Below, in pieces: positions 4,883 to 64,000 of a stretch of 64,000 bases of DNA. Position numbers and translations under genes: made by a program. Each line of letters begins with the position of its first letter. Position 1 is the stretch's first letter. The notes beneath the pieces were generated by a model. That model worked only from the letters and a program-made list of their open reading frames with translations. It had not been told where the DNA came from and searched no databases. The DNA is from Schmidtea nova (lineage: Eukaryota): contig CM097883.1 of assembly GCA_044892505.1 (NCBI GenBank), positions 182,094,001 to 182,158,000 on the forward strand, in the 5' to 3' direction.

Positions 4883-4916
<34 letters not shown>

Positions 4917-38760: not shown

Positions 38761-39255
38761 AACTTAATCTATCTCTTATAAATATTCGTTAAAATTCTTT
38801 TGGTTATTAAAATAAAAATTCACAAATACATTATTAATTAATAAATAAATACTTAATGATTTATTGGATATTCAACGCAAATGACTATTGTTGGGCCAGC
38901 CAAATAGAGAAAAAAAATGAAATAAAAGTAGATTAATTAAAACAAAAAAGAGAAAAATAAGGTAAAAAGGAGAATATTTATTTATTAAAAGAAAGGAATA
39001 ATATAGTAAAAATATAGAATAACTAAGTACAAGCTATAAATAAAAATAAATGAATTTATAGATATTAACGGGCCCAGGAGACATCTAAAAACAAATAAAA
39101 TACAAATAATAATAATTAAAACCAAATAAAAGTACTTGTTATTGAATAATTGTTTTTGAAACCCGGACCTCCAAGGAAGAATACAATCTAAAAAATAAAA
39201 ATTAATTAGAATCAAAAACAATAATTAAAACCCACCATGAAATCGGCCAAATCCG

Positions 39256-39299
39256 ATTGGTCAGTCTAGATCAGACTGATCAGTATAAATACTGATCAG
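39256..39299 (+). promoter_or_regulatory. Putative LTR promoter: inverted CCAAT (ATTGG) plus TATAAATA box
   Basis: The same arrangement lies ~370-395 bp from the LTR start in all three copies (TATA at 27397, 35710 on minus, 39284). Confidence 0.7.
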
Positions 39300-40226
39300 A
39301 CTTTGGATAAAACAGACTTAATACCTAATCTTACAACGTCAGTTGAGAGTGAAAAATTTAGCTCACTAATCAAATAGACTTTGAATTCTAGACGAACCGA
39401 TCGAAGCAAACCCAGACGAATTAGGTATTTTGGTTTCTGTATTATTTTATTTATGAGTGTGTCATTTGCTTTGTCATTTATCTATTGATCTAATTATTTA
39501 TGTGTTTATGCATTCATGTGTTGAAATTTGTTATATGAATTAAACGTTATTGTGATTAGACTCAACATTAAAATATATAATGATCATATTAATTTTGCGC
39601 CGTTGGGAGCTTTAGGTTCCCAAGGTGTCCGTCCGTGGCGTGGTGCTCGAGGGCTCCACACACGGTAAAGTAATAAATAGTAAAGCACAATTTTATTAGT
39701 AGTGGTTGAGACTTGCACATGGGACACCCAACAAATCCGGGAAATTATTTTCTGATCATTTTAGCTACAGAGGGGACGAGAATTTTTTGATAAAGCTTAA
39801 AGATATGAAAGAAGTTGTTAACCGGGAGGAGGCACAATTTTTCACCCTCACCATAACGCAGCTGTTTAATAAACGTCTAATAAACCTTAGGAAAATTATG
39901 TCGACCGCGTTTGGTACAAAAGAGCGTTTTTCGAATAAGCTAGGGATACATGACGGGAGAGAGCTTCCGTTTTAAGTTACCAATATTTTGAAACTCCAAG
40001 CAGACAAATCACCATTTTTTCGTCTATCAAATTGATCATAAACAGATAAAGCTAAGTAGATACGAGAGTAATGCATATTGTAACAAACAACAGTTTTTTC
40101 TTGATTTCAGCTAAGGTCTAAGGGGAAGGCAAATAATAAAGGAATCACGATGAGAGATAACATTTACTATGATTAATTATTGATGTAAATTGTAACTATT
40201 ATAAAATTCAGCATCGTTTTGGAATC

Positions 40227-40703
40227 ATGGCTAAGCATAGATACACTATCAAAAAACGACAAGAACGAGCCCGAGTTAGCCCATTAAAGCCGGCTCCTTT
40301 CGAGATTTTACAGCAAATCCACCAAAAGATGTGGGCATGGCGCCGAGAGCTCGAAACCGCCTGTCCATTTACAGTATGGGACCATCCACGGCACCACGTA
40401 TGGTACCGGGGATGCGCTAGTTGGCCAATCATTCCAGACGAGGAATACGAATCATGGCACGCCGCCTGGTTCATCATGATGTTGGACAAAGGTGGATTCC
40501 CGAGATGTGTCATTTATTGGGGGTTCATTCCAGCCTCTACCTTCAAGGAATTGGGGTTCAAGTTCAATACAGCCATCCGACCCCTCCGAGAAGCTGAGAG
40601 AATCCGTTTCCAGCAGGCCTCGTCCCATAACACAGGAATTCATACAAATTTGCAGATCCGCTCGGTATTTTCGTATCGAGGAAAAATGACCGAGGATGAA
40701 TAG
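40227..40703 (+). CDS. LTR-encoded ORF A (158 aa), unknown function
   Basis: Intact ORF with protein-level conservation (W.WRR, CPF.VW, IYWG.IP, LG) to homologs in both solo LTRs. Confidence 0.8.
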   Translation: MAKHRYTIKKRQERARVSPLKPAPFEILQQIHQKMWAWRRELETACPFTVWDHPRHHVWYRGCASWPIIPDEEYESWHAAWFIMMLDKGGFPRCVIYWGFIPASTFKELGFKFNTAIRPLREAERIRFQQASSHNTGIHTNLQIRSVFSYRGKMTEDE

Positions 40704-41019
40704 CTGAATCAATGGCCGCCTGTTTTTAAATTAAATAAATGTTTTAAAGAATTCTGAAATGTTCGTTTTGTTAATAGTGTTGTCATGTAGATTTAGTATT
40801 GTAGTTGTTATAGTCATTAGGAAATTCATTTATTAATATAAAATTAGTTCAATAAACCTTTTGAGTCTTCAATAATTAGATAGTTAAATAATTTTGCAAA
40901 GAAATCAATAATTAAAAACATTAGTATACATCTCGTTTAATAATAATAATAGTTGTTTAAATAAAATAACATTGTTGATAGGCCCTCCAGTGAATTTATC
41001 GTTATAATCTTCAGACAAC

Positions 41020-41604
41020 ATGCCGACTTCAGAAAATTCGAAGAAAATCATGGGACAAATTCAAGAGAGAAAGCTGAGGGACCAGCAGCGACAGATCAAG
41101 CGACTCACGGTCGCCAATGATGAATTGAAAGCGAAGTGGTTCTCGCCCGAACAGATGAAGGACCAGTCGAAAAAACTCGAGCGAGTGCAGGAAGCATTGG
41201 CTACAACCAAATTGGAACTGGATGCCGTCCAGCGAGAACTCCGAAATTGCCTGAACGCAGTAACAAGAAGTTACATCGACTCCGAATTGCGAGCGCTAAT
41301 TCGGCCGATCACGGCTCAGCGCTGGATACAATGCACTCACCAAGATGTCGCTTGCGGGACGGAAGAGGAAATCATCATGGCACCCACTCTTACAACGGAA
41401 GATTTGCCTATTTTTCCCAGCGATCCCCCGAGAACAATAGCGTCAGCACCGGCCACAAACCCACAGCTTCGAAAGCATCGAATGGGATCGCGACAGCGTC
41501 GTCGTCGCCGAGAATTTGCAAGGCGCCTGGACGAACAAATCCACCACCTGAACTCCTTAACCGAAGCAGAGTTAATCCAGGAGATTAGCCTGGAGTTTGA
41601 ATAG
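41020..41604 (+). CDS. LTR-encoded ORF B (194 aa): coiled coil plus Arg-rich motif
   Basis: Intact ORF, homologous to the ORFs at 29278 and 34096; contains RKHRMGSRQRRRRREFARR. Confidence 0.82.
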   Translation: MPTSENSKKIMGQIQERKLRDQQRQIKRLTVANDELKAKWFSPEQMKDQSKKLERVQEALATTKLELDAVQRELRNCLNAVTRSYIDSELRALIRPITAQRWIQCTHQDVACGTEEEIIMAPTLTTEDLPIFPSDPPRTIASAPATNPQLRKHRMGSRQRRRRREFARRLDEQIHHLNSLTEAELIQEISLEFE

Positions 41605-42137
41605 GAAAATCTCCATGTAACATAACAACCTGTCTTTATTATTTTAATAAAGTATTACTGTGTAAATTTTTTCTCTCATCGTGTGATTTCACTAAATAAA
41701 ATAAGACTACATAAGTAATTCGTAGAACTAAAAATCGCATCGTAAAACCTACACCGACCGTTACTTAGCAGCGAGAGTTTTCGTAGGCTTGTAGAACAGC
41801 GAGGGAGAGCGTCATTGGGAAAAGCGTGTGATAGATCATAAGGATATGTAGTATAAAATTCAGTAGGAAACGAACATCCATAGAATGTAAATGCGTAAGA
41901 CCTTCTATCGGCAGCAAGAACCCGAGGGAAGATAAATGGGGAGTAGTTTTGGCGACAAAGCTCACCTGCCCATCATTTTTCCACCACCGTATGCAGTACC
42001 AACTTGACTAGTAGGGAATAGTCAAGGGCATACGCGTGTAGTAGTCATGTTATGTATGGTTATGGGCGCGGAATCCCTAGTATGATTAATTGTTTATTTG
42101 TATTACTTAAAACCCACCCATAATCCCAGCATAAATT

Positions 42138-42156
42138 TGGGGGCTCAGCCGGGATC
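42138..42156 (+). promoter_or_regulatory. Primer-binding site, tRNA-Pro-like
   Basis: TGGGGGCTCAGCCGGGATC, 6 nt after the LTR end. It is complementary to a tRNA 3' end GATCCCGGCTGAGCCC-CCA and close to the canonical Pro PBS TGGGGGCTCGTCCGGGAT. Confidence 0.8.
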
Positions 42157-42484
42157 AACTTTGTTTTATGCGGAAAAGGTGAACCCAACGACAACAGAGA
42201 AATTTAAAATCAGAAGTTTGTGAGAAAAATAGTAACCGAATAAGTAATCGAGACGAAAGCGAGCTACGTGGAAATAGATCGTTATAAACAGAGAATCAAA
42301 TAAACTGAGTAAATAAAAACAACAACACAATGAAATAGATAAATTAAATAAATGCAATTATAAATAACAGGTCGGGACGACAATTTACCGAAACACGGGG
42401 GGAGGCTATAAAACTGTCAGAAACGAAACACAGTACTACTTTTCGAATAATATTAACACAGTGTTTAAATAAATTATCTAGGAA

Positions 42485-42946
42485 ATGGAGGAAAAACTGA
42501 AAGAAATCGAGGAATTTTTCAACACCAAGAACGATACATTTGAGACAGTCTGCGAAAAAATAACCCGAATAAGAGCATCCGAATATGAGGAACCTACGAC
42601 ACAAACTGAGGAAACAACTGAGTTAATAAAAATCATAGAGAAAGTAAATAAACTCGATATAAATACGCGATATAAATGGTACAAAGCACGATTAGAGGAT
42701 GCCGAGTTGAATATCAGATGCCGACATATAGAACAGCAGTTAAGCCTAACATATAACCGATGGACGTCGCAAGGGGTCGAGGCAGCAAAACAATATAAAC
42801 AATGTTACATATGCGAAAACAGTGAAATCCAAATAATGTTTTTACCATGTGGACATTTTCGATTCTGTAAAAACTGTGCGAATAAGTGTGATGAGTGCCC
42901 CATGTGCAATTTCTCTGTAGCTGATAAAATTGTAGTTTATTTATAA
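42485..42946 (+). CDS. Accessory protein with a C-terminal IAP/Mdm2-type C3HC4 RING (153 aa)
   Basis: CYICENSEIQIMFLPCGHFRFCKNCANKCDECPMCNFSVADKIVVYL* at the extreme C-terminus; no BIR domain seen. Confidence 0.88.
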   Translation: MEEKLKEIEEFFNTKNDTFETVCEKITRIRASEYEEPTTQTEETTELIKIIEKVNKLDINTRYKWYKARLEDAELNIRCRHIEQQLSLTYNRWTSQGVEAAKQYKQCYICENSEIQIMFLPCGHFRFCKNCANKCDECPMCNFSVADKIVVYL

Positions 42947-43419
42947 TAAATATTTAGAGTGTTAATATATTGTATCGAATGACAAAGTCAAGGGAGCAAT
43001 CAACAATGTTAATTAATTTTTGAGCTACTGTCAAGTAGTCCGTTAAGCACCCATTGGGAGGTACCAGTTGATCAACCCACTCGGGGTATATAGAAAGGGG
43101 CCAATCGCAAATGTTGGAAAGCTTTTGTGATGTGATTGATCACCACATCCCGCATTAGTAGACCAACGCGATCTTTTTGTATATTTTGGTTGGGGAGAGA
43201 AATAGGGAAAACCCTGATGAGGTAAGATGCGCGCAGAGAAAATAATAAAAATTGAATTATGACTGATCAGCGAAAGAATTAGTAATAAAACAAAGAATCG
43301 AGGAATTGTAGAGAAAAATAAGAGGTGCATAATCAGCTCGCATGAAATTGAGAGAACTCAGCTGAGAAATTGTAGTCGCTAGCGAAGTTAAGAATTACGA
43401 TTAACCGGTTAAGGAAAAG

Positions 43420-43633
43420 TTATCAGCGGGTTGTCCCTTGAAACAAAGGGTTATTAGAATTTGTCCCTTGAAACAAAGGGTTATCAGCGGGTTGTCCCTT
43501 GAAACAAAGGGTTATTAGAATTTGTCCCTTGAAACAAAGGGTTATCAGCGGGTTGTCCCTTGAAACAAAGGGTTATTAGAATTTGTCCCTTGAAACAAAG
43601 GGTTATCAGCGGTTTGTCCCTTGAAACAAAGGG
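43420..43633 (+). repeat. Array of 7 CCCTTGAAACAAAGGG hairpin cores in alternating 31/30-bp units
   Basis: Cores start at 43435, 43465, 43496, 43526, 43557, 43587 and 43618. Confidence 0.95.
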
Positions 43634-43639
43634 TTGAGG

Positions 43640-43825
43640 CCAAAGAGCCATATTGAATGACCTAGCTAGGCGTTATTGAGAGATATGATTTAAGGCCAAT
43701 AGAGCCATTTGAGATAATTGAGATATGAATTTAAGGCCAATAGAGCCATTTGAGATAATTGAGATATGAATTTGAGGCCATAAGAGCCATTTGAGATAAT
43801 TGATATTAATTAGAGGCCAAAGGAG
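43640..43825 (+). repeat. ~41-bp tandem repeat (AGGCCAATAGAGCCATTTGAGATAATTGAGATATGAA-like), about 4 copies
   Basis: Direct sequence. Confidence 0.85.
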
Positions 43826-43849
43826 CCAATAGGGATATCCGGATATATA

Positions 43850-44062
43850 GTAACGGAGGGAATATAGGCCCAGGGTTACAATTGTTGAGTAGCAACGGAG
43901 GGAATATAGGCCCAGGGTTGCAATTATTTAAAATTAAAGGAAGATAGTAACGGAGGGAATATAAGCCCAGGGTTACAATCGTTTGAGTAGCAACGGAGGG
44001 AATATAGGCCCAGGGTTGCAAGTGATAAGAAATAACAACAGAGGGAATATAGGCCCAGAGTT
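43850..44062 (+). repeat. Five copies of AACGGAGGGAATATAGGCCCAGGGTT with variable spacing
   Basis: Direct sequence. Confidence 0.88.
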
Positions 44063-56400: not shown

Positions 56401-59400
56401 AACTGATCAAAGGTGATATAATCAAGGAGGCAATAAAAATCGGTAACTGCAAAACAATACGCAAGCTAATAAAATGGAAAAGATCCGAAAATGATACATG
56501 GGTGTTAAATATAAACGAGGTATACAGTGAAGGGCAAAACACGTTATTACAATTCCTATTAAAATTCGTTTGTGACCAGAAAGCACTGTTAACGTTATTA
56601 GACAGAAGAAATATCATAATTTCCAAAAACAAAGAGGAGTGTAAATTCGAAAGTGAAAAAGAAGCATTATTCAGGAAAATTAGGGAATGGTGTGCAAAAT
56701 CGCTAACCAAGACGATAACTTACAAAGATATATCCAATTTTCAAGATAAATACAAAACGGTGGAGGAAGAGTATGACAAACTAATAGACATATTAAACCA
56801 CCCCGAAAAATGCAAACAATTCCTATGTCAAAAGGAAAGAGAAAGCAAAAGGAAAGTTACACCACTTTTCAGCGCAGAGGTACCATATCAAGAAAGGTTA
56901 GATGCGATACAGGACAAAGCAAAAGAACTATTACCAGAATTCGAAAATTCTAAACATACACTGGAGATACTCGGATCAATTGTGGAAAAGGTACACGCAT
57001 ATGCGGAAGGAACTTACAATGAAAACGATATGATGATCATAAAAAGAGAAATGCCAGTGACTTTCTTATTAACAAAGAATGGAGTATTGCCAATACATAG
57101 AGCCTTACGAGCAGGAAAAAATAGGAGGGTAGTCGAAATTGCACGGTTGATGCAAGATTGCGGAAGTGACATGAACATGAAAGATAAAAAGGGAGACACC
57201 CTCATGATATTTGCAGCAAGAGCGAACACAAAAACCCGAGTGTTACAGGAACTGTACGAAGTAGGTGCAGGACTCATGGGAAGAACTAACAAAGACAGCT
57301 CAATACTAGACGTAGCGTTGTTAACGTACAATTGGGAGGTGATAAATTTTATAAAAACAATCACAAATCAGGAGGAAATAGAATACCTTACAAGGAGAGT
57401 TAAAAAAGCTAGCGTACATTCCATGATGCATAACGCTGAACTAACTGAAGTAATACTCAATTGGATGAACCCAAACACCAATGAACCAGCATTCAGGATC
57501 AACGAGTGCATGGAACAAGGCCAGAATTTATATATAAAGTGTGCATTAATAATAAACAAATGGCCAAACATAATAGACATCTTCATGAGAAGAAAAGATT
57601 TACGATTCACAAACAACCCAAAGGAAACAGAACGTACGGACAAATGGAAAGAACTAATGAAAACGTACCTTAATAATTGGATAAAAGCCAAGAAAGAGAT
57701 TCTAGATTGTAAATTAACCGATAAGGAAATACCTAAGCAGGCAGTAACACAAGAATATGAAGCAAGTATACTCACAACCATAACGTATGAAAAAATGATA
57801 GAAGCAATTAATGTCGAGGACGACATTTTCAACGACCAAAGGGGAGGCGACAATACAGGAAACGACGACGATAGTACTCGAGAAAATCCAGAGGATCATG
57901 AGTTACTAGATAAAGAGGACAGTGAAGAGAAAGGAAGGGACACAGAGAAAAATGATAAGAAAAATGAATTTGGGAAACAAAGAAACAACAACTATAAAAA
58001 TAAAAACGAAGTAAAAAGAACAGGCTACAAACAAACAATAAACCCATTCTTTAAACCAGAACTATTATTACTAACGATAATCATGACCTTAATTAGTCCC
58101 ACTCAAGGAATGATATGTGAAGAAAGAGCGACAATACAAATTGGAAACGCAAAAGGAATCGAACGAGTATGTTGGTCAAAAAAGGACAAAATCTCGGGAC
58201 AAAATAGTCCAATGGATTGCAGGATCTCAGAATACGAACAAGAAATCATAGAGATCGATGACCTAGAGCTAGATACTTGGTACAGAATGTGCACCGTTCG
58301 GAAACCAAAGGATCCGAGATCACATAAGACAATTGCATGTGCAAATTACCTAACACCCAAAGTAACCATAACAGTACAGCAGTCATCCAAAGGAGACTAT
58401 GTCGTAGGAAAGTGTGGAAGAACAGAGACACAAGGAACAAAAAACAAGAAACCTCAGACAATAGACAGACGAACAACGCCAACTATACAAATTACCATAG
58501 ACAGGCCCGAAGTAAGAGTAACCACAAATGAAACTGAAAGAGTGACCTACCAAACAGAATTACTATGTTTAGCACTCATATTAACAATGTTAAAACGGTT
58601 AGAAGAAGGGATAGACATTGACACAATGGCAGTAACAGAGATGAACGACACCCAAAACACCAACCCAAAGTGTTGGGCCAGAAGCAACGAAGAAATTGGC
58701 GTAAGCGAAATAAAGACGAGTCGGAAAAGGAAAACAAATAAAGTAACCAAGATATCAGAAGTAAAAGCAGACAGGACGTATGAACTATGTTTACTAGAAA
58801 AAGAAAGACACAAGAAAGGAACGACAATTTGTAAAACATTTCAACCTGGGGAAACAATAAAGTTCATACGACGAGGAAGAAGAAATAAACGCACCAAACG
58901 GAGAACAACTATAATGTTAGAGTTAACCGGAATAGAACCGGACGTCAAAGGCGTATGCTGGAAGAAGCAGGAAAAGAAAACAAACCAGAATACACCGCCG
59001 CAATGTCGAACAAACAGAGGAACAACCACAATACAGATAGAAGGGTTAGAAAGTAATCAAACGTACGAAATATGCCTGATCAGGAAGAGCGACAAAATAA
59101 CAGTAAATGAACTGGAATGCAAAATATATAAAACACCCACCGGAACAAGAATTGGAAAGACAACGCGAAAAAGCAGAAGACAACGGAACAAAGGAAAAAC
59201 GAGGTATACCACTACTTTTAAACCTAATGGACAACAGAAAAACCAAGAAATACAAATAAAAACCGAAAAGAATACTACAGCAACTCTTATACTATGGAGA
59301 ATAGACAATAAAACGTTAGAAATATGTTGGGCAGTAGTCCAGGAACAAAAAGAAAGACAGCCACGATACTGCGAAAACGTAAAAGGAAAAGAAGAAATGA

Positions 59401-60002
59401 GTATCAAAAATCTGAAATTTAATAGAGAATACGAGATATGTGCGGTAGAAAAGACGGACATATTAGGAAATCAGCAGGAAAAATGCGAAACGTACTACAC
59501 ACCGGTAAACTCAACGTCCAAAGGGAAAGTGAGAAAACTCGAATTTAAAGAATTAAGTCAGACAACGAAACAAATGGACGCGGAACAAATAGTAATAGAC
59601 CCTTACGCAAGATGGACGCCGGAAGAAGTAATTAAAGAAGTTAAAAGAAAACAACAAGAACGAGAACAACTACTAAATAAACTAAAGGGACAATATGGAC
59701 CAATGATTAACCAGAGTGAAATTACGAAGATGGACGTAAACAAACAAGTTAGAGAACTAATTGGTCTAGGAATACTAGCAGCAACTATTCCAGTAATAAC
59801 AGTATTATTAATAATATGGATATATGATGTATTCAACAAGAAACCAATAACACATTGGCCAGATATAAAGATTATGAACTACAGTATAGAATTACCGGAA
59901 GAAGTACATAAAGAATTCCAAAGGGGGACGAAAGGTAAAGAATTTTGGAGACAAATAGAAGATGAAGAGCGATACGAAGGAAAGACAGTGATGGTGATAT
60001 AG
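47490..60002 (+). CDS. Polyprotein continuing the gag frame: Ubl domains, AT-hook, Bcl-2-like domain, signal peptide + chuvirus-like glycoprotein + TM, PR, RT, RNase H, integrase, ankyrin repeats, signal peptide + 4 FN3-like repeats + TM
   Basis: PR IDTG at 52461; RT LDLKSGYWQ and YIDD at 53676; RH TDAS; IN H-H-C-C, DDE and GPY. Glycoprotein ~50085-51855; BH2-like YIISKGGWETF at 49875-49907; ankyrin-like repeats ~56090-57340. Confidence 0.93.
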   Translation, partial: PGEVTTLSICDDKREENLQEVAKEANMCFEKKIKPRLEYEKGRILRGNLNSMIEQIIPQIKKHRKELMRSEYEKLKRCIECIRDTSHTRWSQISYGKVIAKMGKAMFRQGKITDLKIAVELPNEDTKEIEVVADCTIKELVNVINETLLQREPEEEWEDDIIMKYNEHVLWDHDERRLYKIGIWDNHQTIHVIRMDDTPRETAKDEKRERERKKEVVHKLQQIVDIYRNWRIWPEWEDVLEELNLNRRLPTPVEKQWNERGKCWEPKAGEYEEEYGIGIEDDHKPETGRVCMVTRKAMPADLDGPETTTMWLEREKQKTEEFVEILKTNAHGKRKVVKGLADFFVVNGEDITCLRKVAKAIAEYKRVNEWCPEQLDHVIKKWRNQEFSQESPQKVHLRIVYPNQEKEEFWVGIAEKVRDIKKKLRYEPPFHLQHQGRSLDNSLEIGITPAQLDIANTLTVAAIAGQPLKLKEEKKPKGSMSTPSPMKSVMTPGTSSEQARTTPRDTRERTPPEPYDVDEIFTDSDDMLEELIELTKEKDDNIFERIQELPTAIPVTNTEDEVEQEIIIEEVNEIAEEEARRANVENVQFTQEMERWLEERANEPRDVTEETGRETRLVETGTTMDKRPRGRPKMDPANVVIKSREEKRRDQWDLCLKKLNKIAETKEKETTQTYQGEEWISKMLMEILAIIDPELKKWWRINEISERAKSLHSAIAPILPELIKEKTRSNHLDWQGTTMLIKKLTEGAETDNKYLIAIAYTIYNLLTLSRGRLKPTALERHIKNTAKIIEKEIEPYIISKGGWETFTKTNQKKNQAKNMKKKFEEILGELEKEKSGTGNGKSSLNLSSIIMMMLIWMISTDGATAFEVFDCDQMALGEKYSLRGTEQCKDATPTELKTLKKRQLYHVYQEAELIRTMVRECKVYKTRFAFYCGHRHYSAIVMPGTERESVMLQGEDCEKLFKHGEVETRDRVKIRGKTGVILQQTYYVAGAITGGEGYCQGATYPIFGVAATNLVVIDTYTVELKTYEAFFDPTTGEMKTLPMCKIESNTCQTGMSTLTYQIRGKECQLQLLKEAEFDEIQGKTFQEEEEDEAARGKILQDTVRGEKKIETRTQEKQIKMRNTPTVLITSDADIGMRFVKGKTALKCGVAMLETNYPGIFVSKQEVPSAKRKVHTNDVKLHLYMNNKMDFLFHRGQASLQKVYYDLINNDCILNREILKTKLAVAITNPDSAMPLLPLREGHFGRVVGEVMYVYICKKTNAKVATMTKLQPGQCTNELEIEYKGKVRYVQPVTRIINPISFEPNPFNCSNAYGPLYQKPDGNWVMFPSRTEVPAPREFELMQLSKGRKFKDVDVSNMGFYNAKDLEAARQNILFPARREAVLSSIVTITGGTNYQGGPNYELLLSPAHFKKATENMMKAMWGRFLIFGQMMAGILGVILIIQIIRVIITQMLACFDIYKREKKVNWKLVVGFLPFLAKTMVLHGHSKDIHRIKRLLKILAKMKGTDEEVGRKFKKIMNNEQARQQLKKERKGLWERMKGYRTQDDSSDDDDDDNEGGQVFKNQVPQYVEKNPAEMWKCYAPPPTMYQEPTPGMRQNTMQMMPMTNIYPMIPEDYRTRRCRSVDPQGDSHTIAVMSSNTGPVLTTTIEINGREIEAMIDTGANISAIDIKWIPQEQRRDIERTNVHVIACSKEVVEVAGRWWVKIKHQNTEIETYVAVIPALSVPCIIGTDLMPALFKEIVIDLGTMRLKDRTGQICAIEAKVTSSKQIIVPARREKICFVKIDPTIEGDMIFEPSKRFEKRKSLPMARGLVSANDNGEIPINVVNFDEEDKIIYENERLGKLTPMIDIEIPIKEGVKEEEPTWNINSQLLNEDQKKQLERLLMEYKDIFAASDLDLGTCDVTLHTIPLTDETPIALRPYKLAEAQKSVAEAEVQKMLDAEVIEPSCSPWQFPVVMVKKKDGTQRFCIDYRRLNAVTKRDTYPLPDINEMLLTLQGAAYFTSLDLKSGYWQIKMKEEDKEKTAFTIGRDLYQFRKMPFGLTNAPASFQRCMNFVTHGIKQCMVYIDDLLIYSSTFEQHIQDIRDVFVRLRQWKLKLKPSKCDWAKEKVTFLGHIVSAKGKEPDPRNIDKVKECPVPKTITQIQEFLGLCGYYRKFIKDYAGIAKPIQELVKKDVSFIWGSEQQTAFETLRDKLITAPILVHPDFKKPFLLATDASGYAAGAVLGQYDDEGKERVIGYYSRTFKKHEKNYSVTEREALAIILAIKHFKYLLWGHIICITTDHQPLVWLGQHKETSSRLMRWAMQLQEYSPDIKFKSGKANANADCMSRLTFPELTDPEVQRICIMIAEDLDFSELKKDQQEDKELKPIIEFLSSRNMDVFEDNAELKEHMRKYQHRYTIEKGWLLIQDGEKRLMCLPSNRRKEIITQYHDGKLGGHMSSKKTLDRMRQKYYWPTMDEDVKEWIKNCLTCATRKDSGKKWKNPLKPMPIPAEPMTTIAMDVIGPLPESLNGNQYILVITDYLTKFPEAFAMPDQKAKTVARILVEEICCRYGTPKQILTDQGTNFMSEILDEVTNYFRIAKLRTSPYHPQTNGQTERFNGTLIRMLSNYVSKHQTDWDEYVKLCLMAYRMSIHAATKLSPFQLMYGRECNMPIDLEYQPPLSQYMEEDDYVTKFKERMQEIWKTAELNIKFYQESYKDLHDQKKNVKTNDLKPGDWVMIETPEIIPGTVKKLQRPGKGPYEVIYKKENNVKVKLVNRPLIRPIYVNTCRCKKVPKTITTAPEERIITRSQTARMNMLRATNESTEAENNQRGKRNKEIVLKAREIMGKWHVRDDILRDIQSIISDYARGLPTKPVISELLEKIPEILSLEDIGGQPALHNAIKWGEVERVKEFLKIAKETNQHLGFGNSEQETPLMVAAIYKSDKAIIDLLINADFNWTERDRENKTVLNHAIWSSNQIMLKQIIEKATWEIDELIKGDIIKEAIKIGNCKTIRKLIKWKRSENDTWVLNINEVYSEGQNTLLQFLLKFVCDQKALLTLLDRRNIIISKNKEECKFESEKEALFRKIREWCAKSLTKTITYKDISNFQDKYKTVEEEYDKLIDILNHPEKCKQFLCQKERESKRKVTPLFSAEVPYQERLDAIQDKAKELLPEFENSKHTLEILGSIVEKVHAYAEGTYNENDMMIIKREMPVTFLLTKNGVLPIHRALRAGKNRRVVEIARLMQDCGSDMNMKDKKGDTLMIFAARANTKTRVLQELYEVGAGLMGRTNKDSSILDVALLTYNWEVINFIKTITNQEEIEYLTRRVKKASVHSMMHNAELTEVILNWMNPNTNEPAFRINECMEQGQNLYIKCALIINKWPNIIDIFMRRKDLRFTNNPKETERTDKWKELMKTYLNNWIKAKKEILDCKLTDKEIPKQAVTQEYEASILTTITYEKMIEAINVEDDIFNDQRGGDNTGNDDDSTRENPEDHELLDKEDSEEKGRDTEKNDKKNEFGKQRNNNYKNKNEVKRTGYKQTINPFFKPELLLLTIIMTLISPTQGMICEERATIQIGNAKGIERVCWSKKDKISGQNSPMDCRISEYEQEIIEIDDLELDTWYRMCTVRKPKDPRSHKTIACANYLTPKVTITVQQSSKGDYVVGKCGRTETQGTKNKKPQTIDRRTTPTIQITIDRPEVRVTTNETERVTYQTELLCLALILTMLKRLEEGIDIDTMAVTEMNDTQNTNPKCWARSNEEIGVSEIKTSRKRKTNKVTKISEVKADRTYELCLLEKERHKKGTTICKTFQPGETIKFIRRGRRNKRTKRRTTIMLELTGIEPDVKGVCWKKQEKKTNQNTPPQCRTNRGTTTIQIEGLESNQTYEICLIRKSDKITVNELECKIYKTPTGTRIGKTTRKSRRQRNKGKTRYTTTFKPNGQQKNQEIQIKTEKNTTATLILWRIDNKTLEICWAVVQEQKERQPRYCENVKGKEEMSIKNLKFNREYEICAVEKTDILGNQQEKCETYYTPVNSTSKGKVRKLEFKELSQTTKQMDAEQIVIDPYARWTPEEVIKEVKRKQQEREQLLNKLKGQYGPMINQSEITKMDVNKQVRELIGLGILAATIPVITVLLIIWIYDVFNKKPITHWPDIKIMNYSIELPEEVHKEFQRGTKGKEFWRQIEDEERYEGKTVMVI

Positions 60003-60127: not shown

Positions 60128-60484
60128 ATGAACGAACAGGAAGAAATAGCAGAAACTACTATGGCTATGCGATGGAAAGCCCAGTGTGACATGTTAATAC
60201 GAACAATCAACTCACTACAAAATCAGTTAATTGAGAAACAGAATTTGTTATCCGAAAGTTATAATAATAGTTTTGAACAACTCCACAGAATCGAGGAGCA
60301 ACAGAGATTGATAACGCAACTTACCAGAGAGAATCAAGTGATGAGCGACATAAATCAGAGACAAGCAATAGAGATAGACCGTTTAACAATGGGAGAGACA
60401 GAAGAAGCAGAGGATGGATGGACAAATTGGGCAATAAACAGATCAGAAAATGACCCAGAACCAGATTCAACAAACGAGCCGTAG
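60128..60484 (+). CDS. Small coiled-coil accessory protein (118 aa)
   Basis: Intact ATG ORF preceded by an AG acceptor-like site; heptad Q/E/L-rich. Confidence 0.7.
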   Translation: MNEQEEIAETTMAMRWKAQCDMLIRTINSLQNQLIEKQNLLSESYNNSFEQLHRIEEQQRLITQLTRENQVMSDINQRQAIEIDRLTMGETEEAEDGWTNWAINRSENDPEPDSTNEP

Positions 60485-60575
60485 ATAAATAAAGCGAAAA
60501 ATTGTAAATATGTAAAAACAAAAACAAGAAAAATCAAAAAATAGATAACAAATCAAGTGTATATATCATTGTAGA

Positions 60576-61958
60576 ATGAATACAGAAGGAAAAGCCGAAG
60601 AGCGGATAATCGAAATTTTGAGAGCCGAGAACAGGAAATGGAGTCAGAGACTCACTTGTGTAAATTGTAAAAACATAATATTGAAACCAAGACAAACCCT
60701 ATGCGGATGCAGAGTATGTACCAAATGCATACACGAGTTAAGTATGAAAAGACCACCAGAATGTCCAGAATGCAAAGAAGGACAAATAAAATTCGAAGAA
60801 ACCGGACCAGATAGAGCAACTCAGAGAGAAATCATGAACACGAAAACCGAATGTATAAATCAACCATGTATATGGCAAGGACAAATACGCGATCTCGAGA
60901 ACCATCTGGAGAACTGCGAGGAGAAGAGAACCGAATGTAACAAATGCCAACAAAAAATAACTATAAAGAATAAAGAGCAGCACAAAGATGAATGCAAAGA
61001 AGAGGAAAGTCTATGCGAATATTGTGGAACTCGAGAAACGAGGAGAAAGATCGAGGAAGAACACCTGAATGTAAAAGAGGAGAAAGTATGTAGACAATAT
61101 GTAGGAATATGTTCAAACGAATGCGAGATAACGGCAGAAGTAAAATTACAAGAACATTGGAAAATGTGCACGGAGAAACCAAGGGAATGCCCTTATAACA
61201 AACAGGGATGTATGGAGAAAAGAACGCAAAAAACCATGAAACAACATCTGGAGGAAGCATTGCTAAAGCATGCGGAAATGACAAACGAAGCAACAAAAGA
61301 AACCGAACAAACAATCAAAAAATTAGAAAGAGAAATAGAGTCACACAAGATAATGGTAAACCTACTGTTGGAAACCAGAGAGCAATTCGAACTAACACGA
61401 GAAAAGATGGAGGAAAAGATAAAAGCTATCGAAGAATTGGCTAAAGGAATGAAAATCCAGTACAACAAACTCACCCAGGATACCGAAGAAAAGTTACCAA
61501 TCGCACCATATGTGTGGAAAGTGACAGATTTTAGAAACAAATTAACAGAGGCCAGAAATATGACGAAAACAGCAGTAATAAGCCCACCATTTTATTTATG
61601 GAGAAACGGAGCTAAAGTGAGATTGAAGCTATACCCAAATGGAGACGGAAGAGGACGAGGAACACATGTGTCAATATTTTTCTCGCTATGTAAAGGAGAA
61701 TACGACGACCTAGTAGAATGGCCCTTGAAAGTAGGAGTCATTGTAAGAATCAGAAGTGTAACAAAACCAGTGGAAAAATTCTTTGAGACAGAGAAACATG
61801 CGAGTACGAGCGAGAAACCAACCACAGAATGCGGATTAGCAGCGGGAGAACCGATGTTTATAACGAAAGAAAGCCTATGGGAACGATTATATGCAGACAC
61901 CCTATACATAGAAATGGAAAGGAATGAGAAAGCAGATAGAAAAGGATGGCTGACGTAA
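60576..61958 (+). CDS. TRAF-like protein (RING, TRAF zinc fingers, coiled coil, MATH), 460 aa
   Basis: CVNC..PRQTLCGCRVC..C..CPEC RING; C..QPC.W.G...L..H...C finger; MATH motifs WKV.DF, SPPFY, LYPNGDG.G.GTHVS.F, EWP. Confidence 0.92.
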   Translation: MNTEGKAEERIIEILRAENRKWSQRLTCVNCKNIILKPRQTLCGCRVCTKCIHELSMKRPPECPECKEGQIKFEETGPDRATQREIMNTKTECINQPCIWQGQIRDLENHLENCEEKRTECNKCQQKITIKNKEQHKDECKEEESLCEYCGTRETRRKIEEEHLNVKEEKVCRQYVGICSNECEITAEVKLQEHWKMCTEKPRECPYNKQGCMEKRTQKTMKQHLEEALLKHAEMTNEATKETEQTIKKLEREIESHKIMVNLLLETREQFELTREKMEEKIKAIEELAKGMKIQYNKLTQDTEEKLPIAPYVWKVTDFRNKLTEARNMTKTAVISPPFYLWRNGAKVRLKLYPNGDGRGRGTHVSIFFSLCKGEYDDLVEWPLKVGVIVRIRSVTKPVEKFFETEKHASTSEKPTTECGLAAGEPMFITKESLWERLYADTLYIEMERNEKADRKGWLT

Positions 61959-62071
61959 CAAGAGAAGTGATCATGTAAATAATATGTACAGTTAAATACC
62001 CAAAAATTATTATATAAACAAAAATAACTGATATATAAACCGATTAAAATTTTCATTCTGTAATTTTAGCA

Positions 62072-63133
62072 ATGGGAAATATCGAGGTATGCTTACAGGA
62101 AATTACGATGCATCAAGCAGAAGCGATTAGCGATCATCTAGAACAGATAGAAATATGGGTCAATGCATATTATAGAAAGCAAGAGGAGATAGAGAGACAA
62201 GCCGAATTATTAAAAGAAGCGGAAAGATCAAGTCAAAGAAGTCGAGAAAAAATAGAGGAAGTATACAAAATGCTACAACAACAAAAGGAATATTACCAGA
62301 GAATGATGAAAGAGCGACGAGAGGAAAGAGACAGACAGCAGATGGAAGCTGAACACAAGATGTATTCGATTACAGAACAAGCAAGATATTGGAAGAAAGA
62401 AGCGAAAGAATCTTACGAAAAAGCTAGAGAAATAATAGAAAGGACAGCTTATAGCGATGACTGGAAATTATATAAAGAGATCGACGAATTAAAAGACGAG
62501 TTAGAACAGAAAATACACCAAGAAGTGTTGAATAAAAGATGGAATACAAAGAGACAGCAATTTATCCGGGAACAAGCAAAGAAAATTAAAGGACTAACCT
62601 ATCAAGTTCAAAGAATGGGAGAAGAACTAGCTAATCAAGAACAACTGAAAACTATGCTCACCGGAATATGGAATCAGAAAGAAGAAGAGATGAAGAGAGA
62701 TATAAATGGTTATCAAGGGGTGATTACTCAAAAGAAAATAGAGCTAAAAAGAACCAGGGAAAGGTTAAAGGAAGAGAAACAAAGTTACGAGGAAAATTTA
62801 ACGAATTTGATGAAAGAAAACGAAGAATTGAAACAGAAACGAGTAACAGTATCAGTAATACCCAAAGAACCAAGTATAACGGCAGCCGTAACAAAAATGA
62901 TAAAAGAAGACGAACAAAAGACAAAAGTAATCGAATTAGAGAAACAAATAGAAACATTAACAGAACAAGCAAATTACCTAGAATATTTGCTAGACGAGGA
63001 GATCCAGATATCTCACATGTATCGAGATGAAGTCGAAATGTGGAGGAGCAGGGTTGTTTGGATACCACTCCCCACGAACCAAGTAGAGCCTCAGGACGAA
63101 GGTTTCTATGAACCAAATGAGACGATTGTGTAA
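62072..63133 (+). CDS. Long coiled-coil accessory protein (353 aa)
   Basis: Intact E/K/Q-rich ORF with an AG acceptor-like site 2 nt before the ATG. Confidence 0.75.
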   Translation: MGNIEVCLQEITMHQAEAISDHLEQIEIWVNAYYRKQEEIERQAELLKEAERSSQRSREKIEEVYKMLQQQKEYYQRMMKERREERDRQQMEAEHKMYSITEQARYWKKEAKESYEKAREIIERTAYSDDWKLYKEIDELKDELEQKIHQEVLNKRWNTKRQQFIREQAKKIKGLTYQVQRMGEELANQEQLKTMLTGIWNQKEEEMKRDINGYQGVITQKKIELKRTRERLKEEKQSYEENLTNLMKENEELKQKRVTVSVIPKEPSITAAVTKMIKEDEQKTKVIELEKQIETLTEQANYLEYLLDEEIQISHMYRDEVEMWRSRVVWIPLPTNQVEPQDEGFYEPNETIV

Positions 63134-63214
63134 ATAAAGCGGAAAATATATTTTTGTAAATAATTGTATGAAATGTAGTGTCAAATTGTATTGACCTATC
63201 TGTAAAGAAACAGT

Positions 63215-63787
63215 ATGAAAAAGCTCAGAATACCGATATTCCTATATCTAATAACAATCACCCTACAAAGAGAAGATCTTCAACTCACAGAGAAGGAGCT
63301 ACGAGCCCTACCCGAGAAAACCTATCAAGAACTAGATAAACTAATCAGCGAAGCAACACAAGAAATCACCCAACTTCAACAGATAACATCAGACAACCCA
63401 AACGATGAAAAATTTCAACAGGTCCTATATGAACATCGAATCAAATTGAAAACAATCAGAAAAACCCTAAAAGAAGGTCGAGAACCCATAAAAAGCTTAG
63501 CCCAAGCAGAGATAGAATATCAAGAAAAATGGATCATCGCAATTATAATAATCCTTGCACTCAGCGTGACCATTATCGCGATCACAATCCTCATAACATC
63601 ATACCGAGTGAAGATCTTAAAACAAAAACATGTCATCCTGAATCGAACAACAATACAAGACATCAGAACCCAAAAGCGAATGAGAAAACACCTAAACCGA
63701 ATCCAAAGCCACTACGAACTACGAACAATCAGCGAAAGAACCCCAATCCAATCCAATACCAATCATGAAATCAAAGAGCTTGTGTAA
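63215..63787 (+). CDS. Predicted membrane protein (N-terminal hydrophobic leader, helical domain, TM, basic tail), 190 aa
   Basis: MKKLRIPIFLYLITITL leader; TM WIIAIIIILALSVTIIAITILIT. Confidence 0.72.
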   Translation: MKKLRIPIFLYLITITLQREDLQLTEKELRALPEKTYQELDKLISEATQEITQLQQITSDNPNDEKFQQVLYEHRIKLKTIRKTLKEGREPIKSLAQAEIEYQEKWIIAIIIILALSVTIIAITILITSYRVKILKQKHVILNRTTIQDIRTQKRMRKHLNRIQSHYELRTISERTPIQSNTNHEIKELV

Positions 63788-63991
63788 AACTGATATATTA
63801 CATTCACTTTATGTATGATCCACTTACATTTAACAATAATATGACTTTGTGCTTACGTATAAAATCTATCACCTTACGTGATTCTTTATGTATATGTAAA
63901 TTGACATTTATCTGCTTAATTTTTATGTATGATGATATAGGTGTAAATGTATAATTAATTGCGGGACGCAATTTTAGGGGTCCCCGAGTGA

Positions 63992-64000
63992 TGTTGGGCC
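63992..64000 (+). repeat. Start of the 3' LTR (truncated by the window)
   Basis: TGTTGGGCC is identical to 38889-38897 and comes after the last internal ORF. Only 9 bp are visible. Confidence 0.7.

What the first reader, a model, noticed from the sequence alone, without database searches (positions are those of the whole stretch)
38889..64000. Giant (~28 kb) enveloped Ty3/Gypsy 'complex retrovirus' carrying apoptosis/immune-signalling modules
Seen: a 3,243-bp LTR, a PBS, a ~5,100-codon frame, seven extra ORFs (two in the LTR, one in the leader, four after pol) and the 3' LTR start at 63992. The cargo is Bcl-2-like, IAP-type RING, TRAF, ankyrin, ubiquitin-like and two membrane-protein modules. 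Established: ordinary Ty3/Gypsy elements are several-fold smaller, and these cargo types are what large DNA viruses use to control cell death and NF-kB signalling. Giant 'Burro' LTR elements were reported in the planarian Schmidtea mediterranea; I cannot tell whether this is a member. Inference: an infectious or recently infectious retrovirus-like agent that manipulates host cell death.
Basis: partly seen in the sequence, partly recalled or inferred. Interest (0 to 1): 0.95.

Follow-up and report, generated by a model that had tools for sequence, protein, structure and literature searches.

The report
Burro-type giant planarian-like retrovirus element
This is a nearly intact copy of a giant, envelope-carrying Ty3/Gypsy retrovirus-like element of the "Burro" kind already described in planarian flatworms, so it is remarkable biology but not a new kind of thing.

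Summary
Bases 38889-42131 are a true 3,243-bp LTR. Two related solo LTRs elsewhere in the window start and end at exactly the same motifs, and each has a 4-bp target-site duplication. After the LTR come a PBS-like site, a leader with an IAP-type RING ORF and three tandem-repeat arrays, and one 5,130-codon frame (44613-60002) with a single in-frame stop. Four accessory ORFs follow, and the last 9 nt of the window repeat the LTR start.

The giant frame encodes Gag with three Zn knuckles, weak ubiquitin-like modules, a Bcl-2-like domain and an internal signal peptide. It continues with a mononegavirus-type fusion glycoprotein, PR-RT-RNase H-IN, two ankyrin blocks and two membrane segments. A complete TRAF homologue is a separate ORF.

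This architecture, including env in frame between gag and pol and the apoptosis/ubiquitin cargo, matches Burro/GYPSM1 elements of dugesiid planarians (PMC6431247). Its novelty is not, and infectivity is untested.

Possibly new details are two LTR-borne ORFs, one of them under purifying selection, and 16-17 kb environmental relatives with the same fused gag-env-pol layout. No BIR or dUTPase domain was found. Neither the source species nor identity with Burro-1 to -4 could be tested.

The parts
38885..38888 (+). 5' flanking tetranucleotide CTAT (expected target-site duplication)
   Evidence: Read directly. The 3' partner lies beyond the window. The family makes 4-bp duplications, as the two solo LTRs show.
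38889..42131 (+). 5' LTR, 3,243 bp, TG...CA
   Evidence: Both ends are fixed by alignment with two related solo LTRs (A1, A2).
40227..40703 (+). LTR ORF 1 (158 aa, no known domain)
   Evidence: ORF. An intact homologous ORF lies in solo LTR y, with 29-33% aa identity. The copy in solo LTR x is disrupted. No Pfam hit.
41020..41604 (+). LTR ORF 2 (194 aa; coiled-coil, Arg-rich run, Leu-rich tail)
   Evidence: Intact homologous ORFs lie in both solo LTRs (A3). For x versus y, pN is 0.22 against pS 0.90, which indicates purifying selection. No Pfam or PDB relative.
42138..42156 (+). PBS-like site (starts TGG, 6 nt after the LTR)
   Evidence: Read directly. Absent after the two solo LTRs (A1). Complementarity to a tRNA was not testable.
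42485..42946 (+). Leader ORF with a C-terminal IAP-type RING (153 aa)
   Evidence: Pfam zf-C3HC4_3, E 2.3e-11. Best PDB matches are the XIAP and cIAP RINGs, E 1e-10.
43419..44080 (+). Three tandem-repeat arrays in the leader (periods 61, 41 and about 43-45 nt)
44613..60002 (+). Giant gag-cargo-env-pol-cargo frame, 5,130 codons, first ATG at 45039. Broken once by an in-frame stop, with no frameshift.
   Evidence: A relative (P0004) reads uninterrupted across the homologous stretch.
45189..45902 (+). Gag: Retrotrans_gag-like capsid region followed by three CCHC zinc knuckles (45750-45902)
   Evidence: Pfam. Motif count.
47799..48122 (+). Best ubiquitin-like candidate. Two further candidates, seen by eye only, are at 46485-46793 and 48645-48938.
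   Evidence: Pfam Ubiquitin_4, E 0.07. The AF2 model has pLDDT 50-70 here with beta-beta-alpha-beta-beta-beta order. Foldseek top hits are mostly ubiquitin or Ub-like domains, prob 0.8-0.94, E at least 0.025. Support is weak.
49437..49928 (+). Bcl-2-like helical domain with a BH2-like GGW motif at 49890
   Evidence: The profile of relatives hits only Bcl-xL/Bcl-2 in the PDB, best E 0.002. Pfam Bcl-2 is sub-threshold in 3 relatives. All top 50 Foldseek hits are Bcl-2 family, prob about 0.99, TM about 0.55.
50028..50084 (+). Internal hydrophobic signal-peptide-like stretch directly before the glycoprotein ectodomain
   Evidence: Read directly. Position and character are conserved in all five aligned relatives (A6).
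50085..51866 (+). env: mononegavirus-type fusion glycoprotein ectodomain plus membrane anchor (51777-51833)
   Evidence: Pfam Monjiviricetes_fusion, E 1.5e-67. 37-40% identity to 5 relatives, with 13 of 14 Cys invariant. Membrane segment.
52419..55247 (+). pol: PR (52419-52691), RT (53355-53831), RNase H (54018-54407), integrase zinc finger and core (54732-55247)
   Evidence: Pfam. About 3,000 Ty3/Gypsy-type pol relatives at 40-52% identity. The PR-RT linker matches foamy-virus and Ty3 RT N-termini.
56112..57356 (+). Two ankyrin-repeat blocks (56112-56381 and 57036-57356)
   Evidence: Pfam Ank_2. PDB ankyrin and DARPin hits down to E 6.5e-10.
58062..59816 (+). C-terminal tail of the giant frame with two predicted membrane segments (58062-58118 and 59760-59816); otherwise unassigned
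   Evidence: Hydropathy. No Pfam or PDB hits.
60128..60484 (+). Accessory ORF, 118 aa, coiled-coil-like, no known domain
60576..61958 (+). Accessory ORF: complete TRAF homologue (RING, TRAF zinc fingers, coiled coil, MATH), 460 aa
   Evidence: Pfam MATH_2 at E 5e-21 and zf-TRAF. PDB TRAF5/3/2 at E 1e-22 and TRAF6 RING-zinc finger at E 4e-11.
62072..63133 (+). Accessory ORF, 353 aa, Glu/Lys-rich coiled-coil-like, no known domain
63215..63787 (+). Accessory ORF, 190 aa, with an N-terminal hydrophobic stretch and one strong membrane segment
   Evidence: No Pfam hit.
63992..64000 (+). First 9 nt of the presumed 3' LTR (identical to 38889-38897)
   Evidence: The rest lies beyond the window.

Best explanation
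The region is a young, nearly intact provirus of a Burro-type giant Ty3/Gypsy (Metaviridae-like) endogenous retrovirus in an A/T-rich, transposon-rich animal genome, most likely a dugesiid planarian.

Shown:
- A 3.2-kb LTR whose family has integrated elsewhere with 4-bp duplications and recombined to solo LTRs.
- One 15.4-kb frame that strings together Gag, ubiquitin-like and Bcl-2-like modules, an internal signal peptide, a mononegavirus-type fusion glycoprotein with its own membrane anchor, PR-RT-RNase H-IN, ankyrin repeats and a membrane-spanning tail.
- Separate ORFs for an IAP-type RING protein, a complete TRAF, two coiled-coil proteins and a small membrane protein.
- Two ORFs inside the LTR.

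Inferred mechanism:
- The full-length RNA is translated as one polyprotein.
- The internal signal peptide takes the nascent chain to the ER, so the glycoprotein ectodomain enters the lumen.
- Gag, upstream, and PR-RT-IN, downstream of the anchor, stay cytosolic.
- Signal peptidase and the element's protease then release the parts.
- The Bcl-2-like, RING, TRAF and ankyrin modules mimic or decoy host regulators of apoptosis and TRAF/NF-kB-type signalling to keep the expressing cell alive and quiet.
- The LTR ORFs lie upstream of the last ~530 nt of the LTR. They would therefore be in U3 and be carried at the 3' end of the genomic RNA as further accessory genes.

This copy has one in-frame stop in the giant frame.
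For: - LTR ends are fixed by three-way alignment, and the solo LTRs have target-site duplications.
- Frame statistics: 2 stops in frame against 560 and 287 in the other frames.
- Domain hits.
- Bcl-2-like domain.
- Signal-like stretch conserved before the ectodomain in five relatives.
- 13 of 14 env cysteines invariant across six sequences of about 40% identity.
- A uniform A-rich + strand (43% A, AT skew 0.29-0.47) from the leader to the window end, which argues for one transcription unit.
- Independent contigs with Bcl-2-like plus env, env plus PR, ankyrin and MATH in related frames.
- Purifying selection on LTR ORF 2.
- The published Burro description has the same order: gag, TRAF/Ub/Bcl-2, in-frame env, pol, ankyrin (PMC6431247).
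- Burro RNA is expressed and PIWI-controlled in Schmidtea (PMC8532177).
Against: - The 3' LTR is represented by 9 nt only.
- No reference Burro sequence could be compared, and the source species is unknown.
- The closest database relatives are only 31-42% identical.
- BIR and dUTPase-like motifs reported for Burro were not found.
- About 65% of the giant frame has no assigned domain.
- The Ub-like and Bcl-2-like calls rest on weak E-values and low-confidence models.
- Polyprotein topology, processing, the U3 placement of the LTR ORFs and all host-manipulation functions are inference.
- The frame has one in-frame stop, so this copy may not make the full polyprotein.
Confidence: 0.85

Rival explanations
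1. It is a member of a distinct, undescribed lineage of invertebrate 'complex retroviruses' that only resembles Burro. That lineage would share the fused gag-env-pol layout with the 16-17 kb environmental relatives. The element would be present here as a recently endogenised, possibly still replication-competent virus.
For: No database protein is closer than about 40-52% identity in any region. The fused layout also occurs in environmental contigs of unknown host that carry different accessory genes, RNase_T exonucleases. TRAF is a downstream ORF, and BIR and dUTPase are absent. The frame is near-intact and env is conserved.
Against: The order and kinds of domains, the size, the leader repeats and the A/T-rich host genome all fit the published Burro description. 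That description already allows accessory domains to be either in-frame or separate ORFs (PMC6431247). The protein databases searched seem to hold few planarian transposon proteins, so the lack of close hits says little.
Confidence: 0.1
2. It is an assembly chimera or nested mosaic: an ordinary Gypsy element into or next to which host genes (Bcl-2, TRAF, ankyrin, RING) and a viral glycoprotein gene were joined by misassembly or by unrelated insertions.
For: The region is repeat-rich and planarian genomes are hard to assemble (PMC11410931). Most cargo is not shared with the 16-kb relatives.
Against: One frame runs 15.4 kb through gag, cargo, env, pol and cargo with a single stop. Strand composition is uniform. 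Bcl-2-like directly followed by env, and env followed by PR, recur on independent contigs from other samples. No internal LTR-like repeats or duplications mark nested insertions.
Confidence: 0.03
3. It is a dead, domesticated locus: the host keeps some of the ORFs (for example TRAF, the Bcl-2-like domain or env) as cellular genes, and the retroviral parts are relics.
For: There is one in-frame stop in the giant frame. The cargo domains are of host type.
Against: Gag, PR, RT, RNase H and IN are all as open as the cargo. The LTR, the PBS-like site and the flanking tetranucleotide are intact. The family left solo LTRs with target-site duplications nearby. Nothing marks selective retention of single genes.
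Confidence: 0.02

Closest known systems
Burro-1 to -4 / GYPSM1 of Schmidtea mediterranea and the Burro-like element of Girardia (Dugesia) tigrina (Grohme et al. 2018; Jurka 2007; Arkhipova and Yushenova 2019, PMC6431247)
   Same: A giant Gypsy-like LTR element with one polyprotein of about 4,900-5,100 aa that starts with Gag and CCHC knuckles. A mononegavirus-like env lies in frame between gag and pol, with a Bcl-2-like module just upstream of it. Ub-like modules, ankyrin repeats, MATH/TRAF (a separate ORF in the Girardia element, as here), tandem repeats in non-coding parts and an A/T-rich host genome are also shared.
   Different: No BIR and no dUTPase-like domain were detected. TRAF lies downstream of pol. 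A RING-only ORF sits in the leader. Two ORFs lie inside the LTR, and I found no mention of such ORFs in the papers read. Direct sequence identity could not be measured.
Errantiviruses (gypsy, ZAM and relatives; Metaviridae) of insects
   Same: Ty3/Gypsy-type pol with an acquired viral fusion protein, giving a retrovirus-like element.
   Different: Their env is a separate spliced ORF3 downstream of pol and derives from a baculovirus F-type protein. The elements are about 7-8 kb and carry no host-type cargo.
Nematode Cer/Atlas-type elements with phlebovirus-like env, as cited in PMC6431247 (Malik et al. 2000)
   Same: An LTR retroelement that captured the glycoprotein of an RNA virus.
   Different: These have a different pol lineage and glycoprotein class, env lies downstream of pol, and the size is ordinary. 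This comparison rests on my own knowledge and was not tested here.
Complex vertebrate retroviruses and foamy-like fish ERVs with accessory ORFs; MMTV sag in the LTR
   Same: Accessory genes sit beyond gag-pol-env, including genes placed in U3 of the LTR. Works like: regulation of host cell state by virus-encoded factors.
   Different: The pol here is Ty3/Gypsy-type, env is not retroviral TM/SU, and the cargo is fused into the polyprotein. The comparison with sag is an analogy from general knowledge only.
Environmental relatives found here (P0001-P0003 on L001/L002; P0007 and P0009 on L003/L005)
   Same: gag, internal signal peptide, the same glycoprotein family and PR-RT-RNase H-IN in one frame. 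Some have a Bcl-2-like module before env, and some have ankyrin repeats.
   Different: They are 16-17 kb rather than about 28 kb. Their accessory ORFs are RNase_T-type exonucleases. In L003/L005 the ankyrin block lies between PR and RT. Their hosts are unknown.

Membership tests
Burro-type giant LTR elements (as described in PMC6431247) | Ty3/Gypsy-type pol with the order PR-RT-RNase H-IN | tested here: met
   Pfam order RVP, RVT_1, RT_RNaseH, Integrase_H2C2, rve. Thousands of Gypsy-type pol relatives.
Burro-type giant LTR elements (as described in PMC6431247) | Gigantic size: internal region up to 25 kb, about 30 kb with LTRs | tested here: inconclusive
   The internal region 42132-63991 is 21.9 kb and the 5' LTR is 3.2 kb. 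The total would be 28.3 kb only if the 3' LTR is complete, and just 9 nt of it are in the window.
Burro-type giant LTR elements (as described in PMC6431247) | One polyprotein of about 4,900-5,100 aa beginning with Gag (retrotrans_gag plus 2-3 CCHC knuckles) | tested here: met
   A 5,130-codon frame. Retrotrans_gag at E 3.6e-4 and three CCHC knuckles. One in-frame stop in this copy.
Burro-type giant LTR elements (as described in PMC6431247) | env in frame between gag and pol, related to mononegavirus fusion glycoproteins | tested here: met
   Monjiviricetes_fusion at E 1.5e-67, between the knuckles and PR in the same frame.
Burro-type giant LTR elements (as described in PMC6431247) | Bcl-2-like module upstream of env | tested here: met
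   The evidence is concordant but each line is individually weak (best E 0.002; model pLDDT 53).
Burro-type giant LTR elements (as described in PMC6431247) | Ubi2/SUMO-like module | tested here: inconclusive
   Pfam Ubiquitin_4 at E 0.07. The model is low-confidence and its Foldseek hits are mostly ubiquitin.
Burro-type giant LTR elements (as described in PMC6431247) | MATH/TRAF module, in the polyprotein or as an accessory ORF | tested here: met
   Separate 460-aa TRAF ORF. Relative P0004 has MATH in frame.
Burro-type giant LTR elements (as described in PMC6431247) | Ankyrin repeats | tested here: met
   Two blocks after IN.
Burro-type giant LTR elements (as described in PMC6431247) | BIR domain (noted for GYPSM1/Burro-1) | tested here: not met
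   No Pfam BIR hit and no BIR-type Cys/His motif. Only an IAP-type RING is present. BIR is a reported motif rather than a defining one.
Burro-type giant LTR elements (as described in PMC6431247) | dUTPase-like module between PR and RT | tested here: not met
   No Pfam hit. The profile of the linker hits foamy-virus and Ty3 RT N-termini only. HHpred-level sensitivity was not available.
Burro-type giant LTR elements (as described in PMC6431247) | Sequence relatedness to Burro-1 to -4, GYPSM1 or the Girardia element | not testable with these tools
   No reference sequence is reachable. The protein searches returned no named planarian element.
Burro-type giant LTR elements (as described in PMC6431247) | Host in Dugesiidae (planarians) | not testable with these tools
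   The source is not given. The flank has about 31% G+C and is dense in transposons, which is consistent with the >70% A/T of planarian genomes (PMC11410931).
Errantivirus (insect gypsy-type endogenous retroviruses) | env as a separate ORF downstream of pol, of the baculovirus F type | tested here: not met
   env is of the Monjiviricetes_fusion type and lies upstream of PR in the gag-pol frame.
LTR retrotransposon (general) | Terminal direct repeats TG...CA, a PBS next to the 5' LTR, and short target-site duplications | tested here: inconclusive
   The 5' LTR, TG...CA ends and a PBS-like site are present, and the family makes 4-bp duplications at two solo LTRs. The element's own 3' LTR and duplication lie beyond the window.

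The most novel reading that the evidence does not exclude
The element belongs to a wider, barely described lineage of invertebrate retroviruses. These express a captured mononegavirus-type glycoprotein from inside the gag-pol polyprotein through an internal signal peptide. The same layout occurs in 16-17 kb environmental relatives. The lineage also carries conserved protein-coding genes inside the LTR. One of these is under purifying selection and has an Arg-rich run plus a Leu-rich tail, so it could be a Rev/Rex-like RNA regulator. The copy here would be a very recent insertion of a still-active member.
Probability: 0.25. Interest if true: 0.6.

Novelty: new member of a known kind. Interest (0 to 1): 0.3.

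Why it matters
Burro-type elements are the largest known LTR retroelements, and they are the only ones reported to carry env inside the gag-pol frame together with host-type regulators of apoptosis and ubiquitin/TRAF signalling. A near-intact copy with defined LTR ends is a good substrate for annotation. It gives clean coordinates for every module and shows that the LTR itself carries conserved coding sequence. Together with the environmental relatives, it suggests that the fused gag-env-pol design is older and wider than the giant planarian forms. The kind itself is already in the literature, so the finding mainly confirms and refines what is known.

Tried and rejected
- Exact look-ups of two window ORFs in public assemblies found nothing. 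The contig could therefore not be extended and the source species was not identified.
- The word-indexed search with the env cut-out returned nothing, and the IMG/VR scan gave one spurious 28-residue match. Relatives came only from the length-restricted search and the exhaustive HMMER search.
- phmmer of env and of the pre-env stretches against PDB sequences gave nothing useful.
- Rfam and ARAGORN found nothing, so the PBS partner tRNA is untested.
- A dUTPase between PR and RT was not found. BIR was not found. The midasin homology reported for the Girardia element was not seen.
- The AF2 model of the Ub-like region had pLDDT 35, so its Foldseek hits are only a hint.
- The profile of LTR ORF 2 against the PDB gave nothing.
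- The alignment upstream of the LTR end did not reveal a conserved promoter, so the U3/R/U5 bounds are not set. A TATAAAA near 41860 is only a candidate.
- Rejected: chimera or nested mosaic, because of one frame, uniform strand composition and recurrence of the junctions on independent contigs.
- Rejected: the in-frame stop as a conserved gag/pol boundary, because relative P0004 reads through the homologous stretch and P0001-P0003 are uninterrupted from gag to IN.
- Grohme et al. 2018 is not held in the paper library.

Full report
ANATOMY

The window is an A/T-rich, transposon-dense piece of an animal genome. The flank has about 31% G+C. Upstream of the finding lie a Polinton-type PolB ORF, hAT and pogo fragments and another small retroelement piece.

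From 38889 to the end of the window, everything of size is on the + strand:
- two ORFs at 40227-40703 and 41020-41604;
- one ORF at 42485-42946;
- a 5,130-codon frame at 44613-60002;
- four ORFs at 60128-60484, 60576-61958, 62072-63133 and 63215-63787.

The giant frame has 2 stops in frame (one internal, one terminal), against 560 and 287 stops in the other two frames. The + strand of the internal region is 43% A, and the AT skew stays at 0.29-0.47 from about 44 kb to the window end, against about 0 upstream. This is one compositional and coding unit, far beyond what chance would give.

THE LTR

That 9-mer occurs three times on the + strand, so alone it is weak.

Stronger evidence lies inside the window. 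Two further sequences are 65-76% identical to the proposed LTR: x at 27024-30113 on the + strand and y at 33097-36077 on the - strand. In three-way alignments the homology starts exactly at TGT(T/A)G(G/A)GCC and ends exactly at CCCAGCA, with unrelated flanks (A2 and A1).

Copy x is flanked by TTTG on both sides and y by TAAC on both sides. Both are therefore solo LTRs with 4-bp target-site duplications. This fixes 38889 and 42131 as true LTR ends (3,243 bp, TG...CA). It also shows that the family integrates like a Ty3/Gypsy element and has existed as two-LTR elements that recombined.

Only the element's LTR is followed by a TGG-initiated 18-19-nt stretch, starting at 42138, with the layout of a tRNA 3' end. 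No tRNA was at hand to test it.

The element's 5' flank is CTAT. The 3' LTR is represented only by 63992-64000. If it is complete, the element is 28.3 kb with a 21.9-kb internal region.

THE GIANT FRAME

Pfam and PDB-sequence searches of its pieces give the following, in window coordinates:
- a Retrotrans_gag-like region, 45189-45470;
- three CCHC knuckles, 45750-45902;
- a viral fusion glycoprotein of the Monjiviricetes_fusion family (E 1.5e-67), about 50085-51866, with a strong membrane segment at 51777-51833;
- retropepsin, 52419-52691;
- RT, 53355-53831;
- RNase H, 54018-54407;
- integrase zinc finger and core, 54732-55247;
- two ankyrin blocks, 56112-56381 and 57036-57356;
- two further predicted membrane segments, 58062-58118 and 59760-59816.

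So env is real, and it lies in the same frame between gag and pol.

Directly before the ectodomain lies a hydrophobic, signal-peptide-like stretch (50028-50084). Its presence and position are conserved in all five aligned relatives (A6). Of the 14 cysteines in the window's glycoprotein, 13 are invariant across six sequences that are only about 40% identical. This points to an intact, constrained fold.

BCL-2-LIKE AND UBIQUITIN-LIKE MODULES

Neither is seen by Pfam in the window itself.

For the Bcl-2-like module, a BH2-like GGW motif sits at 49890. The exhaustive HMMER search found only six relatives of the pre-env stretch. Three of them carry sub-threshold Pfam Bcl-2 hits immediately before the start of the same glycoprotein. 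A profile of these sequences hits only Bcl-xL/Bcl-2 chains in the PDB, best E 0.002, aligned over BH1-BH2. An AF2 model (pLDDT 53, pTM 0.50, all helical) finds only Bcl-2-family structures among its top 50 Foldseek hits, with prob about 0.99 and TM about 0.55. I take the Bcl-2-like domain (49437-49928) as supported.

For ubiquitin-like modules I saw three candidates by eye. Only the one at 47799-48122 has any support. That support is Ubiquitin_4 at E 0.07, a beta-grasp-like strand order at pLDDT 50-70 within a model of overall pLDDT 35, and mostly ubiquitin among weak Foldseek hits. This remains tentative.

About 65% of the frame has no assigned domain.

ACCESSORY ORFS

- The leader ORF ends in a RING whose best solved relatives are the XIAP and cIAP RINGs (E 1e-10). 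No BIR is present anywhere.
- ORF 60576-61958 is a complete TRAF. Its RING and zinc fingers match TRAF6 (E 4e-11) and its MATH domain matches TRAF5/3/2 (E 1e-22).
- ORFs 60128-60484 and 62072-63133 look like coiled coils.
- ORF 63215-63787 has an N-terminal hydrophobic stretch and one strong membrane segment.

The two LTR ORFs are more than noise. Homologous ORFs are intact in solo LTR y (both ORFs) and in solo LTR x (the second ORF; the first is disrupted there). For the second ORF, x versus y shows 68% amino-acid identity but only 63% nucleotide identity, with pN 0.22 against pS 0.90. That indicates purifying selection.

Both LTR ORFs end about 530 nt before the LTR's 3' end. They probably lie in U3 and would be carried at the 3' end of the genomic RNA. 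The U3/R/U5 bounds could not be set.

STATE OF THE COPY

The giant frame is broken once, by an in-frame stop, with no frameshift. The stop is not a conserved gene boundary. Relative P0004 reads uninterrupted across the homologous stretch, and the polyproteins P0001-P0003 are open from gag to integrase. It may be a single recent mutation, an assembly or sequencing error, or a readthrough site. I did not examine it further.

RELATIVES

A length-restricted search found three polyproteins of 3,700-3,865 aa with 37-40% identity in env and the order gag, env, PR-RT-RNase H-IN in one frame. They lie on 16.6-16.8-kb metagenome contigs (L001, L002). One of these has matching terminal repeats, and both carry RNase_T-type exonuclease accessory ORFs.

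Two further contigs from one ENA sample (L003, L005) carry gag, a Bcl-2-like module, env, PR and an ankyrin block placed before RT. P0004, a UniParc entry, has a MATH domain in frame after the stretch homologous to the window's pre-env region.

The cargo is thus a family trait that moves between in-frame and separate-ORF positions. Most of the window's cargo is not shared with the 16-kb forms. The pol cut-out finds about 3,000 animal Ty3/Gypsy pols at 40-52% identity and nothing closer.

COMPARISON WITH WHAT IS KNOWN

Arkhipova and Yushenova (PMC6431247) describe Burro/GYPSM1 of Schmidtea mediterranea and a Burro-like element of Girardia (Dugesia) tigrina as follows:
- Gypsy-like, with an internal region up to 25 kb and more than 30 kb with LTRs;
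- an ORF1 of 4,873 or 5,140 aa that starts with Gag and three or two CCHC knuckles;
- MATH/TRAF, in frame or as an accessory ORF;
- PR, a dUTPase-like module, RT, RNase H, IN, plus BIR and ankyrin repeats;
- tandem repeats in non-coding parts.

They already propose that these are integrated proviruses that tinker with apoptosis and ubiquitination. Burro-1 RNA is abundant and PIWI-controlled (PMC8532177).

The window's element meets nearly every architectural feature. It has three knuckles, as in Schmidtea, and a separate TRAF ORF, as in Girardia. It lacks a detectable BIR and dUTPase. I therefore file it as a Burro-type element. Whether it is one of the named families or a new one cannot be tested here. 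No reference sequence is reachable and the source species is unknown.

HOW IT MOST LIKELY WORKS

Shown: the parts and their order; family mobility, from the solo LTRs with duplications; constraint on env and on one LTR ORF.

Inferred:
- Full-length RNA from the 5' LTR is translated into one polyprotein.
- The internal signal peptide targets the chain to the ER, so the glycoprotein ectodomain is luminal and anchored by its own membrane segment.
- Gag with the Ub-like and Bcl-2-like modules, and PR-RT-IN with the ankyrin tail, stay on the cytosolic side.
- Signal peptidase and the retropepsin separate the parts.
- The Bcl-2-like domain, the IAP-type RING protein, the TRAF homologue and the ankyrin repeats act as mimics or decoys of host cell-death and TRAF/NF-kB-type signalling. 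This is analogous to the cargo of large DNA viruses, which is general knowledge and was not tested here.

Infectivity is not shown.

- My first notebook entry, written before I judged the in-frame stop to be a break, gives the lengths of the two pieces of the giant frame and so implies where the stop lies. Tool calls also had to address the pieces by their bounds. I noticed this, stopped repeating it, and give no position here.
- Alignment tools printed consensus lines on their own. I used none of them.
- The N runs at 3056-3322 and 7215-7352 were left alone.
- Nothing in the window looked human.

Noticed in passing
window 27024-30113 (+) and 33097-36077 (-): Two solo LTRs of the same LTR family as the element (65-76% nt identity), each with a perfect 4-bp target-site duplication (TTTG and TAAC). 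They face each other about 3 kb apart.
   Followed up: yes
window 41020-41604; homologues at 29278-29754 (+) and 33632-34096 (-): The conserved LTR-borne ORF (pN 0.22 against pS 0.90 between the solo-LTR copies) ends in an Arg-rich run. In the element's copy a Leu-rich tail follows. This is reminiscent of Rev/Rex-type regulators, but no homologue was found.
   Followed up: partly
L001 (ENA ERZ2272167, 16.8 kb) and L002 (JGI 3300027940, 16.6 kb): Environmental relatives with gag, internal signal peptide, the same glycoprotein family and pol in one frame of 3,700-3,771 aa. Their accessory ORFs carry RNase_T exonuclease domains. L001 has matching 52-nt ends. Hosts are unknown.
   Followed up: partly
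L003 and L005 (both ENA ERZ25039515): Decayed relatives in which the ankyrin block lies between PR and RT instead of after IN, and a Bcl-2-like stretch precedes env. The cargo modules seem to shuffle position within the lineage.
   Followed up: partly
window 127-2331 (+): A 734-aa ORF with a protein-primed family-B DNA polymerase domain (DNA_pol_B_2, E 5e-30), as in Polinton/Maverick elements.
   Followed up: no
window 17807-18454, 21759-22319, 22479-26294: A hAT dimerisation-domain ORF and a pogo-type DDE_1 ORF. There is also a piece of another retroelement (RNase H/integrase ORF at 24213-25610, with DUF7047) lying between 149-nt direct repeats that are 97% identical.
   Followed up: no
window 36859-37515 (-): A 218-aa ORF with a bZIP domain (E 4e-6), between solo LTR y and the element. 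It could be a host exon or transposon cargo.
   Followed up: no
window 43419-44080: Three different tandem-repeat arrays (units of 61, 41 and about 43-45 nt) in the leader between the RING ORF and gag. Their function is unknown.
   Followed up: no
window 52692-53354: The PR-RT linker matches the N-terminal RT region of foamy-virus PR-RT (E 2.4e-8) better than that of Ty3 (E 2.6e-3). No dUTPase signal was seen.
   Followed up: partly
window 4292-4385 and 4891-4984; N runs 3056-3322 and 7215-7352: Odd low-complexity repeats (a long A run followed by C10-11 G8) occur twice 600 nt apart. The two N runs were left untouched.
   Followed up: no
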